A DNA stretch of 64,000 bases from Octopus bimaculoides. Its lineage: Eukaryota. The position numbers and the translations under genes are program-made. Position 1 is the first letter of the stretch. Each line of letters begins with the position of its first letter. The DNA lies in contig NC_069000.1 in NCBI RefSeq assembly GCF_001194135.2, forward strand, positions 44,006,054 to 44,070,053. The letters are read 5' to 3'. Of the stretch, positions 25-32,227 are shown in pieces. The notes beneath the pieces are model-generated. The model ran no database searches, was not told the origin of the DNA, and saw nothing but the letters and a program-made list of their open reading frames with translations.

Positions 25-79
25 ATGTCCCTCTCATGGCTGATACTGGTGCTTACTGTCTGCAATATACTCTACATTG
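25..79 (+). CDS. YWTD gene coding exon 1, signal peptide [18 protein letters not shown]
   Basis: Acceptor tttcag at 2-7, ATG at 25, hydrophobic stretch, donor G|gtaaga, phase 1. No upstream in-frame stop inside the window. Confidence 0.75.

Positions 80-32227: not shown

What the first reader, a model, noticed from the sequence alone, without database searches (positions are those of the whole stretch)
25..32227. LRP-like propeller array fused to Sushi and a glycine-rich domain, with no visible receptor parts
Seen: a phase-consistent 26-exon frame reading SP-[YWTD]-EGF-[YWTD]-EGF-[YWTD]-linker-Sushi-Gly-rich. Established: LRP1/2/4/5/6 have LDLa repeats and a TM segment; nidogen has a single propeller; ALK/LTK carry a Gly-rich domain but no YWTD propellers. 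Inference: this is a lineage-specific secreted mosaic protein, possibly a ligand trap, matrix component or bridging factor. The remaining gap is only about 300 N and HAUS5 ends about 1.2 kb after it, leaving little room for a TM segment and tail.
Basis: partly seen in the sequence, partly recalled or inferred. Interest (0 to 1): 0.82.

Follow-up and report, generated by a model that had tools for sequence, protein, structure and literature searches.

The report
Secreted mollusc propeller–Sushi–glycine-rich protein
This octopus gene encodes a secreted protein with three LRP-type beta-propellers, one Sushi module and a glycine-rich end domain of the kind seen in phage tail fibres; it has no membrane anchor, is conserved across molluscs, is mislabelled "LRP5" in databases, and its function is unknown.

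Summary
A 26-exon gene on the + strand (25..32227) splices through 25 canonical GT-AG junctions into an open 1142-codon frame. All six internal N-gaps lie in introns. No residue is missing at those junctions when compared with the full-length Octopus vulgaris orthologue (97.7% identity, no indels).

The architecture is signal peptide, three YWTD propellers with two EGF modules, a linker, one Sushi module and a glycine-rich domain (GRD). Only the last exon is cut, by gap 32228-32524. Orthologues add 86-98 residues and then stop. HAUS5 ends 1184 nt after the gap on the opposite strand. Three independent cDNA contigs from another cephalopod confirm a single transcript with no transmembrane segment.

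- The family is not cephalopod-specific. Gastropods and bivalves have colinear orthologues, auto-named "LRP5/6-like".
- The GRD is not ALK-type by sequence (hhalign probability 6%). It is a divergent relative of the phage and giant-virus glycine-rich domain PF21722 (best viral model TM 0.67), and it is the most conserved domain.

Its function as a soluble binding or bridging protein is inferred, not shown. This is a new variant of known parts and of moderate interest.

The parts
25..79 (+). Exon 1: start codon and signal-peptide-like hydrophobic N-terminus (aa 1-19)
   Evidence: The ATG is conserved with the other cephalopod's cDNA. Kyte-Doolittle 19-residue mean is 2.07. Donor GTAAGA.
951..1087 (+). 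Exon 2: N-terminal region and propeller 1 (aa 19-64)
2071..2163 (+). Exon 3: propeller 1 (aa 65-95)
3268..3337 (+). Exon 4: propeller 1 (aa 96-119)
7265..7427 (+). Exon 5: propeller 1, IYWTD blade (aa 119-173)
   Evidence: Pfam Ldl_recept_b
7731..7865 (+). Exon 6: propeller 1, LFWSD blade (aa 173-218)
   Evidence: Best Ldl_recept_b stretch, aa 173-214
11213..11333 (+). Exon 7: propeller 1 (aa 218-258)
11995..12139 (+). Exon 8: propeller 1 (aa 259-307)
12930..13055 (+). Exon 9: EGF-like module 1 (aa 307-349), phase 1-1
   Evidence: Six cysteines with EGF spacing. Aligns to an LRP6 EGF. No Pfam hit of its own.
13424..13605 (+). Exon 10: propeller 2 (aa 349-409)
13896..13968 (+). Exon 11: propeller 2 (aa 410-434)
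14937..15090 (+). Exon 12: propeller 2, LYWTD blade (aa 434-485)
   Evidence: Pfam Ldl_recept_b
16104..16238 (+). Exon 13: propeller 2, LYWTD blade (aa 485-530)
17438..17561 (+). Exon 14: propeller 2 (aa 530-571)
18055..18205 (+). Exon 15: propeller 2 (aa 572-622)
18912..19028 (+). Exon 16: EGF-like module 2 (aa 622-661), phase 1-1
   Evidence: Pfam FXa_inhibition E 1e-6, aa 624-656
19502..19650 (+). Exon 17: propeller 3 (aa 661-710)
20643..20733 (+). Exon 18: propeller 3, VYWTD blade (aa 711-741)
   Evidence: Pfam Ldl_recept_b
21201..21363 (+). Exon 19: propeller 3 (aa 741-795)
23209..23336 (+). Exon 20: propeller 3 (aa 795-838)
25814..25973 (+). Exon 21: propeller 3, LYWTD blade (aa 838-891)
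26424..26521 (+). Exon 22: propeller 3 (aa 891-924)
27474..27554 (+). Exon 23: cysteine-free linker (aa 924-951), phase 1-1. It sits where gastropod and bivalve orthologues carry a third cysteine-rich EGF-like module.
28440..28622 (+). Exon 24: Sushi/CCP module (aa 951-1012), phase 1-1
   Evidence: Profile against PDB: factor H E 1e-42. Foldseek: probability 1.0, rmsd 1.7 A over 58 residues.
30974..31201 (+). Exon 25: first third of the glycine-rich domain (aa 1012-1088)
32063..32227 (+). Exon 26, visible part: middle of the glycine-rich domain (aa 1088-1142). It runs open into the gap.
   Evidence: In Argonauta the same exon encodes 144 aa followed by a stop.
32228..32524 (+). Assembly gap hiding the rest of exon 26. 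From O. vulgaris, 86 codons plus a stop are expected, about 261 nt.
32615..32630 (+). Two AATAAA motifs about 90-100 nt after the gap: candidate poly(A) signals of this gene (inference)
   Evidence: The other cephalopod's cDNA has at least 135 nt of 3' UTR before the contig ends.
33708..46246 (-). Downstream boundary: HAUS5, tail-to-tail with this gene. Its stop codon is at about 33708-33710.
   Evidence: Pfam HAUS5 E 3.7e-27. Same gene order in Argonauta.

Best explanation
The locus is the Octopus bimaculoides copy of a mollusc-wide gene. The protein is about 1,230 residues long: signal peptide, then three LRP5/6-like YWTD beta-propellers separated by two EGF modules, then a short linker, one Sushi/CCP module, and a 217-residue C-terminal glycine-rich domain. 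It has no LDLa repeats, no membrane anchor and no cytoplasmic tail.

Shown: the gene structure, the domain identities, the single transcript, the ORF ending directly after the GRD, and conservation across three molluscan classes.

Inferred: the protein is exported and acts as a soluble extracellular adaptor. The GRD is the most conserved part and is predicted to be a beta-sandwich carrying a lattice of extended glycine strands. I propose it is the binding tip for a conserved partner, as domains of this fold class are in phage tail fibres and in ALK/LTK. The propeller array would supply further LRP-type binding faces, so the protein would bridge or sequester extracellular ligands rather than signal itself.
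For: - Gene model: 25 canonical junctions and an open frame.
- cDNA: three independent contigs, upstream in-frame stops, TGA directly after the GRD.
- C-terminus: full-length O. vulgaris and Argonauta proteins end 86-91 residues past the point where the window breaks off.
- No membrane anchor: no hydrophobic segment reaches 2.0 outside the N-terminus in 10 orthologues, against 3.23 for a true snail LRP-like receptor. Pfam finds no LDLa domain.
- Distribution: the GRD profile finds only 49 proteins among 1.84 billion cluster representatives. The long hits with propellers are all molluscan and share this architecture.
- Conservation: octopus versus other classes is 36-43% in the GRD and 19-27% in the propellers.
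- Structure: the GRD model is confident (pLDDT 88.8, pTM 0.89).
- Fold class: apart from one unrelated peptidase chain at rank 16, the best 20 PDB fold matches are phage tail-tip or fibre proteins and ALK/LTK GRDs. There are 108 viral matches at E<=1e-3, the best with TM 0.67.
- Precedent for binding: the Pam3 fibre's TNF-like plus glycine-rich domains recognise the host receptor and resemble the C. elegans ALK GRD (PMC9608196).
- Extracellular context: invariant cysteines in the GRD and 9 N-x-S/T sites.
Against: - There is no experimental or expression evidence for secretion, binding partners or tissue.
- The signal peptide is judged only from hydropathy.
- PDB fold matches for the GRD are weak (E 2e-3 to 0.1, TM 0.14-0.25).
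- The octopus GRD is below Pfam's threshold for PF21722 (18.5-19.2 bits against 24.3).
- Whether the propeller binding faces are functional was not examined.
Confidence: 0.5

Rival explanations
1. It is a conventional LRP-type membrane receptor whose LDLa, transmembrane and tail exons are hidden in the 32228-32524 gap or lie unassembled elsewhere.
For: The window's last exon is open-ended at the gap. NCBI names the gene 'LRP5' or 'LRP5-like'.
Against: - The full-length O. vulgaris protein, the Argonauta genomic last exon and the other cephalopod's cDNAs all stop 86-98 residues after the break, with no hydrophobic segment.
- HAUS5 ends 1184 nt after the gap here and 1.09 kb downstream in Argonauta.
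- Gastropod and bivalve orthologues also end 20-40 residues after the GRD.
Confidence: 0.02
2. The model fuses two genes: a propeller gene and a separate Sushi/glycine-rich gene.
For: Some database entries are Sushi-GRD-only or GRD-only fragments, for example Haliotis asinina 357 aa and Mytilus coruscus 266 aa.
Against: - Three independent transcript contigs span everything in one ORF.
- Longer models of the same clusters (Haliotis rubra 1156 aa, Mytilus californianus 843 aa) carry the propellers too.
- The arrangement is colinear in three molluscan classes.
- All junctions are phase-compatible.
Confidence: 0.02
3. It is a soluble decoy or modulator of Wnt-pathway ligands, acting through its LRP5/6-like propellers. 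The Sushi-GRD part would serve only for localisation or oligomerisation.
For: The best matches outside the family are LRP6 ectodomains (24-27% identity over the propeller-EGF modules).
Against: - There are three propellers, not four.
- The propellers are the least conserved part (19-27% between classes), whereas the GRD is the most conserved.
- No ligand-contact residues were examined.
- A snail LRP-like protein with a transmembrane segment exists separately (P0006).
Confidence: 0.13
4. It is a humoral recognition molecule, such as an opsonin or agglutinin. The phage-fibre-like GRD would bind microbial surface structures, and the Sushi module would link to complement-like factors.
For: - The GRD fold class is used by phages to recognise bacterial surfaces.
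- The Sushi module is most similar to factor H CCP19-20.
Against: - The exhaustive GRD search returned a single 50%-identity cluster for octopus, with gene order shared between octopus and Argonauta. It is not the expanded, fast-evolving pattern usual for mollusc immune lectins.
- There is no expression or induction evidence.
Confidence: 0.13
5. It is a structural extracellular-matrix component, like nidogen, whose propeller docks on laminin.
For: It is a secreted propeller-EGF mosaic. It is present in shell-less octopods as well as shelled molluscs, so it is not specific to the shell.
Against: No NIDO, G2F or thyroglobulin domains. Nidogen-like proteins are only weak matches (E 2e-6).
Confidence: 0.12

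Closest known systems
LRP5/LRP6 (arrow) ectodomain
   Same: Tandem six-bladed YWTD propellers alternating with EGF modules. These are the best matches outside the family (24-27% identity).
   Different: Three modules instead of four. No LDLa repeats, no transmembrane segment and no PPPSP tail. It carries Sushi and a GRD instead.
Phage and giant-virus glycine-rich domain (Pfam PF21722 Gly_rich_2; e.g. Pam3 gp24 fibre, Bxb1 tail tip, Satyrvirus proteins)
   Same: - 17 of 18 family GRDs hit PF21722 at E<=1.
- The family profile reaches Pelomyxa proteins, one of which passes the PF21722 threshold.
- Best structural match TM 0.67, E 2e-12.
- Same class: a beta-sandwich plus a glycine lattice.
   Different: - Octopus scores are below the Pfam threshold (18.5-19.2 bits against 24.3).
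- tblastn against 50,697 phage records finds nothing.
- It sits at the C-terminus of an animal secreted mosaic protein and has conserved disulfide cysteines.
ALK/LTK ligand-binding glycine-rich (TG) domain, PF12810
   Same: It is an extracellular glycine-rich domain in an animal protein. ALK/LTK GRD chains make up most of the top-20 PDB fold hits. There is a shared '[14 protein letters not shown]' motif.
   Different: - hhalign probability 6%.
- PF12810 is hit by 1 of 18 members, at E 0.84.
- TM 0.14-0.19.
- About 217 residues against about 310.
- No kinase, MAM or LDLa context.
Nidogen
   Same: A secreted protein with a YWTD propeller and EGF modules.
   Different: Nidogen has a single propeller plus NIDO, G2F and thyroglobulin domains. 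None of these is present here.
Branchiostoma XP_035673048.1 (GRD-Fz-Ig-trypsin) and amoebozoan RING-B-box-GRD proteins
   Same: They carry the same GRD family by profile search (E 2e-46 and 1e-11 to 3e-5).
   Different: The partner domains are entirely different. The amoebozoan proteins look intracellular, like TRIM proteins.

Membership tests
LRP5/6 co-receptors | Four YWTD-EGF modules | tested here: not met
   Three propeller-sized blocks (aa 20-306, 350-621, 662-923) with two EGF modules.
LRP5/6 co-receptors and the LDLR family in general | LDL-receptor class A (LDLa, PF00057) repeats | tested here: not met
   No PF00057 hit in P0001, P0003 or eight mollusc orthologues, whereas true LRPs in the same search carry it.
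LRP5/6 co-receptors and the LDLR family in general | Single-pass transmembrane segment and cytoplasmic tail | tested here: not met
   The ORF ends directly after the GRD in cDNA and in orthologues. No transmembrane-grade hydropathy peak.
YWTD (LDL-receptor class B) propeller | Repeated Ldl_recept_b motifs in blocks of about 260 residues | tested here: met
   PF00058 E 7e-40, six matched stretches. That each block has six blades was not checked structurally.
Sushi/CCP module | About 60 residues with four conserved Cys and a conserved Trp, CCP fold | tested here: met
   C955, C984, C998, C1009 and W1003 are conserved among the cephalopod sequences; C955, C984, C1009 and W1003 are invariant across all eight orthologues. 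The family profile hits factor H at E 1e-42. Foldseek probability 1.0, rmsd 1.7 A. The single-sequence Pfam score is sub-threshold (19.5 bits against 20.7).
ALK/LTK glycine-rich domain (PF12810) | Sequence match to the family | tested here: not met
   1 of 18 members hits at E 0.84. hhalign against the human ALK GRD (sequence verified against 7mzw) gives probability 6%.
ALK/LTK glycine-rich domain (PF12810) | TNF-like beta-sandwich carrying a polyglycine-II lattice | tested here: inconclusive
   ALK/LTK chains are among the top PDB fold hits, but with TM 0.14-0.19 and probability <=0.18. Model coordinates could not be inspected.
Gly_rich_2 (PF21722) phage and giant-virus glycine-rich domain | Pfam score above the gathering threshold | tested here: inconclusive
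   Octopus and the other cephalopod score 18.5-19.2 bits against 24.3. 17 of 18 family GRDs hit at E<=1, best 2.3e-7. Pelomyxa P0053 passes with 34.1 bits.
Gly_rich_2 (PF21722) phage and giant-virus glycine-rich domain | Shared fold | tested here: met
   BFVD gives 108 hits at E<=1e-3. The best is Satyrvirus A0A3G5AF42, E 2.3e-12, TM 0.67. Many hits are named 'Glycine-rich domain-containing protein' or tail fibre. These are predicted, not solved, structures.
Nidogen | NIDO and G2F domains with one propeller | tested here: not met
   No such Pfam hits.

The most novel reading that the evidence does not exclude
The C-terminal domain is a phage or giant-virus-type receptor-binding tip that animals have adopted as an extracellular ligand-binding module independently of, or ancestrally to, ALK/LTK. 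On this reading the mollusc family is a soluble trap or co-receptor for an unidentified conserved ligand, physically coupled to LRP-type propellers. That would make it a recognition or signalling system with no counterpart in model organisms.
Probability: 0.12. Interest if true: 0.75.

Novelty: new variant of a known kind. Interest (0 to 1): 0.45.

Why it matters
- It corrects an annotation that has spread through databases. The "LRP5" and "LRP5/6-like" entries of octopus, scallop, clam and abalone are not receptors and should not be counted as Wnt co-receptors in comparative studies.
- It defines a conserved, mollusc-restricted secreted protein whose most constrained part is a glycine-rich domain of the phage-fibre/ALK fold class. 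In animals this module is otherwise known mainly from ALK/LTK.
- If the GRD proves to be a ligand-binding tip, the family gives a tractable soluble system for studying how such glycine lattices recognise partners, and where the ALK ligand-binding domain came from.
- On present evidence it remains a domain-architecture finding with no functional data.

Tried and rejected
- Pfam on the window's truncated GRD alone gave no hit.
- Sequence and profile searches of the GRD against PDB sequences gave only spurious glycine-linker hits.
- tblastn of the GRD against 50,697 phage records gave no match.
- Weak tblastn hits of the GRD at window 40099-40317 are a GGT/GAT microsatellite, not a paralogue.
- The word-indexed homologue search with the GRD profile returned only 5 fragments, because glycine words saturate the index. 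The exhaustive HMMER search was needed.
- Literature searches for the orthologues' accessions, the Lottia ID and the Pfam accessions found nothing relevant.
- The species behind SRR8281661/72/75 could not be identified.
- ORFs at 56.5-58.3 kb and two retroelement-like ORFs gave no Pfam hit.
- I looked at the C-termini for a KDEL-type retention signal (octopus ...FEEL, Argonauta ...FEDL). I rejected it because the endings do not fit the consensus as I recall it (own knowledge) and are not conserved; the other cephalopod ends ...PDFH.

Full report
**Observation**

The window is AT-rich eukaryotic DNA (38% GC) with 16 N-gaps. A first homology search with roughly concatenated coding pieces returned a 1142-aa database protein, P0001, that the window encodes exactly. 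Anchoring P0001 on the window gives 26 + strand exons. Solving each junction gives 25 canonical GT..AG introns. The spliced CDS is 3427 nt, has no stop, and translates to P0001 residue for residue.

I tested the program's warning about gaps first. The six gaps inside 25..32227 fall in introns 3, 4, 12, 20, 24 and 24. The protein aligns to the full-length Octopus vulgaris orthologue at 97.7% identity with zero gaps over all 1142 residues. It also aligns without indels at those junctions to the Argonauta and a second cephalopod orthologue. No exon is lost in those gaps, and contig order and orientation are correct. Only the seventh gap (32228-32524) interrupts coding sequence, because exon 26 runs open into it.

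**Anatomy**

- Pfam finds LDL-receptor class B (YWTD) repeats at E 7e-40, and an FXa_inhibition/EGF module at aa 624-656.
- The first EGF (exon 9) has no Pfam hit. It has six cysteines with EGF spacing and aligns to an LRP6 EGF.
- The three propeller-sized blocks align to LRP6 propeller-EGF modules at 24-27% identity.
- The Sushi module is marginal for a single sequence (E 1e-3; factor H E 4e-4). It is unambiguous with a family profile (factor H E 1e-42) and by structure (Foldseek probability 1.0, rmsd 1.7-2 A over about 58 residues).
- EGF1, EGF2, the linker and Sushi are each single phase 1-1 exons, the classic signature of shuffled modules. The GRD occupies exons 25-26.

**The 3' end**

In Argonauta hians the last exon encodes 144 residues and then a stop. 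HAUS5 lies tail-to-tail 1.09 kb downstream, and a soluble guanylate cyclase lies upstream.

In the window, HAUS5 is confirmed on the - strand by colinear tblastx and by Pfam (E 3.7e-27). Its stop is at about 33708, which is 1184 nt after the gap. O. vulgaris shows that 86 residues follow ...SECPIG before the stop, about 261 nt against an estimated 297 N. Two AATAAA motifs lie about 90-100 nt after the gap.

A 1240-aa orthologue from another cephalopod (species not identified; 58% identical to Octopus) is encoded by three independent RNA-seq contigs. These have in-frame stops upstream of the ATG and a TGA directly after the GRD. The Sushi and GRD exons therefore belong to the same transcript as the propellers, and no transmembrane or tail exon exists.

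Hydropathy supports this. No segment outside the N-terminus approaches transmembrane values in 10 orthologues, while a genuine snail LRP-like receptor found in the same search scores 3.23. A borderline stretch of 1.6-1.9 inside the GRD sits just ahead of the GGGG motif, in a part of the model that is beta-strand.

**Distribution**

An exhaustive HMMER search of 1.84 billion cluster representatives with a GRD profile found only 49 proteins at E<=1e-3. The long hits are:

- Gastropod proteins: Pomacea XP_025100012.1, Batillaria KAK7492407.1, Haliotis XP_046567721.1, Lottia XP_009049285.1, Patella XP_050416222.2.
- Bivalve proteins: Mizuhopecten XP_021369029.1, Mactra KAL4228575.1, Ruditapes XP_060586815.1, Potamilus, Mytilus, Solemya.

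Where the models are complete, these have the same propeller-EGF-Sushi-GRD order. A full-length alignment of eight species is colinear. Sources call them "uncharacterized", "LRP5-like" or "LRP6-like". The octopus entries are named "LRP5" or "LRP5-like". The family is therefore mollusc-wide, not cephalopod-specific, and is unnamed.

Gastropod and bivalve members carry a cysteine-rich EGF-like module after propeller 3. Cephalopods have the cysteine-free exon-23 linker in that position.

The same GRD family also occurs in an amphioxus GRD-Frizzled-Ig-trypsin protein, and in RING-B-box-GRD proteins of the amoebozoans Pelomyxa and Thecamoeba.

**Nature of the glycine-rich domain**

- AlphaFold models built on the family alignment are confident: Sushi+GRD has pLDDT 84.5 and pTM 0.83, and GRD alone has pLDDT 88.8 and pTM 0.89. 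They show eight beta-strands plus long, high-confidence segments without regular secondary structure in the glycine-rich part.
- Against the PDB, 19 of the 20 best fold matches of the GRD are phage tail-tip or fibre proteins (Bxb1 9d93, Pam3 7ypx/7yfw) or ALK/LTK GRDs; rank 16 is an unrelated peptidase. These matches are weak (E 2e-3 to 0.1, TM 0.14-0.25).
- Against predicted viral structures there are 108 matches at E<=1e-3. The best is a Satyrvirus protein (E 2.3e-12, TM 0.67), followed by many Caudovirales "glycine-rich domain-containing" and tail-fibre proteins.
- By sequence, 17 of 18 family GRDs hit Pfam PF21722 (Gly_rich_2) at E<=1. The octopus score is sub-threshold, but one Pelomyxa member (P0053) passes. 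Only 1 of 18 touches PF12810 (ALK_LTK_GRD), at E 0.84.
- hhalign of the family profile against the human ALK GRD, whose sequence I verified against 7mzw, gives 6% probability and only a 20-column glycine motif.
- The Pam3 fibre paper describes TNF-like plus glycine-rich domains as the receptor-recognising tip, and notes their similarity to the C. elegans ALK GRD (PMC9608196).

My reading is that the mollusc GRD belongs to that broad fold class and is closest to the viral Gly_rich_2 branch. It is not a member of the ALK/LTK family.

**Function**

The GRD is the most conserved domain between molluscan classes: 36-43% identity against 19-27% for the propellers and 20-30% for Sushi. It also has invariant cysteines. 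I therefore infer that the GRD is the functional core, and that the protein is a soluble extracellular adaptor that binds one partner through the GRD tip and others through its LRP-type propellers.

More specific versions cannot be separated with the present data: a Wnt-ligand decoy, a humoral recognition factor, or a matrix component. The two scenarios that would have overturned the finding, a hidden transmembrane segment or a fusion of two genes, are effectively excluded.

**Novelty and score**

All the parts are known domain types, and the gene is already in databases under misleading automatic names. I found no literature on it. The combination, its restriction to molluscs, and the presence of a phage or giant-virus-type glycine-rich domain in a conserved animal secreted protein make it a new variant of a known kind.

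Noticed in passing
window 33708-46246 (- strand): HAUS5 (augmin subunit 5) lies tail-to-tail with the gene. The order guanylate cyclase, this gene, HAUS5 is seen in Argonauta; the window itself shows only this gene followed by HAUS5.
   Followed up: yes
window 200-490 and 13 further copies (e.g. 1309-1611, 3460-3698, 21778-22046, 29722-29979, 50487-50755): A repeat of about 270 bp (67-92% identity, both orientations) is scattered through the introns and beyond. It creates many spurious ORFs ending '...PEPCGW'. It is probably an octopus SINE.
   Followed up: partly
window 31615-31971 (+), intron 25; window 9842-10252 (-), intron 6: Two ORFs look like C-terminal pieces of non-LTR retrotransposon proteins (a '...LLYSCETW...' motif, from recollection). 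Pfam gave no hit.
   Followed up: partly
database entries for this gene (P0080 = XP_052830941.1, P0081 = XP_029647613.1, P0002 Argonauta): Public models are inconsistent. The newer O. bimaculoides RefSeq model (1051 aa) lacks EGF2 and the last exon and ends '...SKTEDKQ'. The O. sinensis model has a wrong C-terminus ('...SWMSFL'). The Argonauta model omits the EGF1 exon, although that exon is present in its genome at L001 18705-18824.
   Followed up: partly
window 27474-27554 (exon 23) versus orthologues P0028, P0036, P0038: Cephalopods have a cysteine-free 27-residue linker where gastropods and bivalves have a third EGF-like cysteine-rich module after propeller 3. The linker exon keeps phase 1-1, so it may be a decayed EGF exon.
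   Followed up: no
P0027 (Branchiostoma), P0053/P0058/P0060 (Pelomyxa), P0067 (Thecamoeba), BFVD A0A3G5AEZ5 (Satyrvirus 'E3 ubiquitin-protein ligase'): The same glycine-rich domain is combined with Frizzled, Ig and trypsin domains in amphioxus, and with RING and B-box domains in amoebozoans. A giant virus also has a protein named 'E3 ubiquitin-protein ligase' that matches the GRD fold. This hints at exchange between amoebae and their giant viruses.
   Followed up: no
C-termini of P0029, P0032, P0034, P0038: Several gastropod and bivalve orthologues (Pomacea, Batillaria, Mizuhopecten, Potamilus) have a 20-40 residue tail after the GRD, with a conserved cysteine and ending in '-EP'. Cephalopods lack this tail.
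   Followed up: no
window 40130-40320: A GGT/GAT-rich microsatellite translates to Gly/Asp runs and mimics weak GRD similarity in tblastn.
   Followed up: yes
L005 (ENA ERZ24894579 contig, 466 kb) and L006: Contigs filed as metagenome assemblies carry the two GRD exons of an orthologue. L005 also has an upstream EGF-like exon. They are eukaryotic (35-38% GC) and resemble the gastropod sequences. Their prokaryote-style gene calls are exon fragments.
   Followed up: partly
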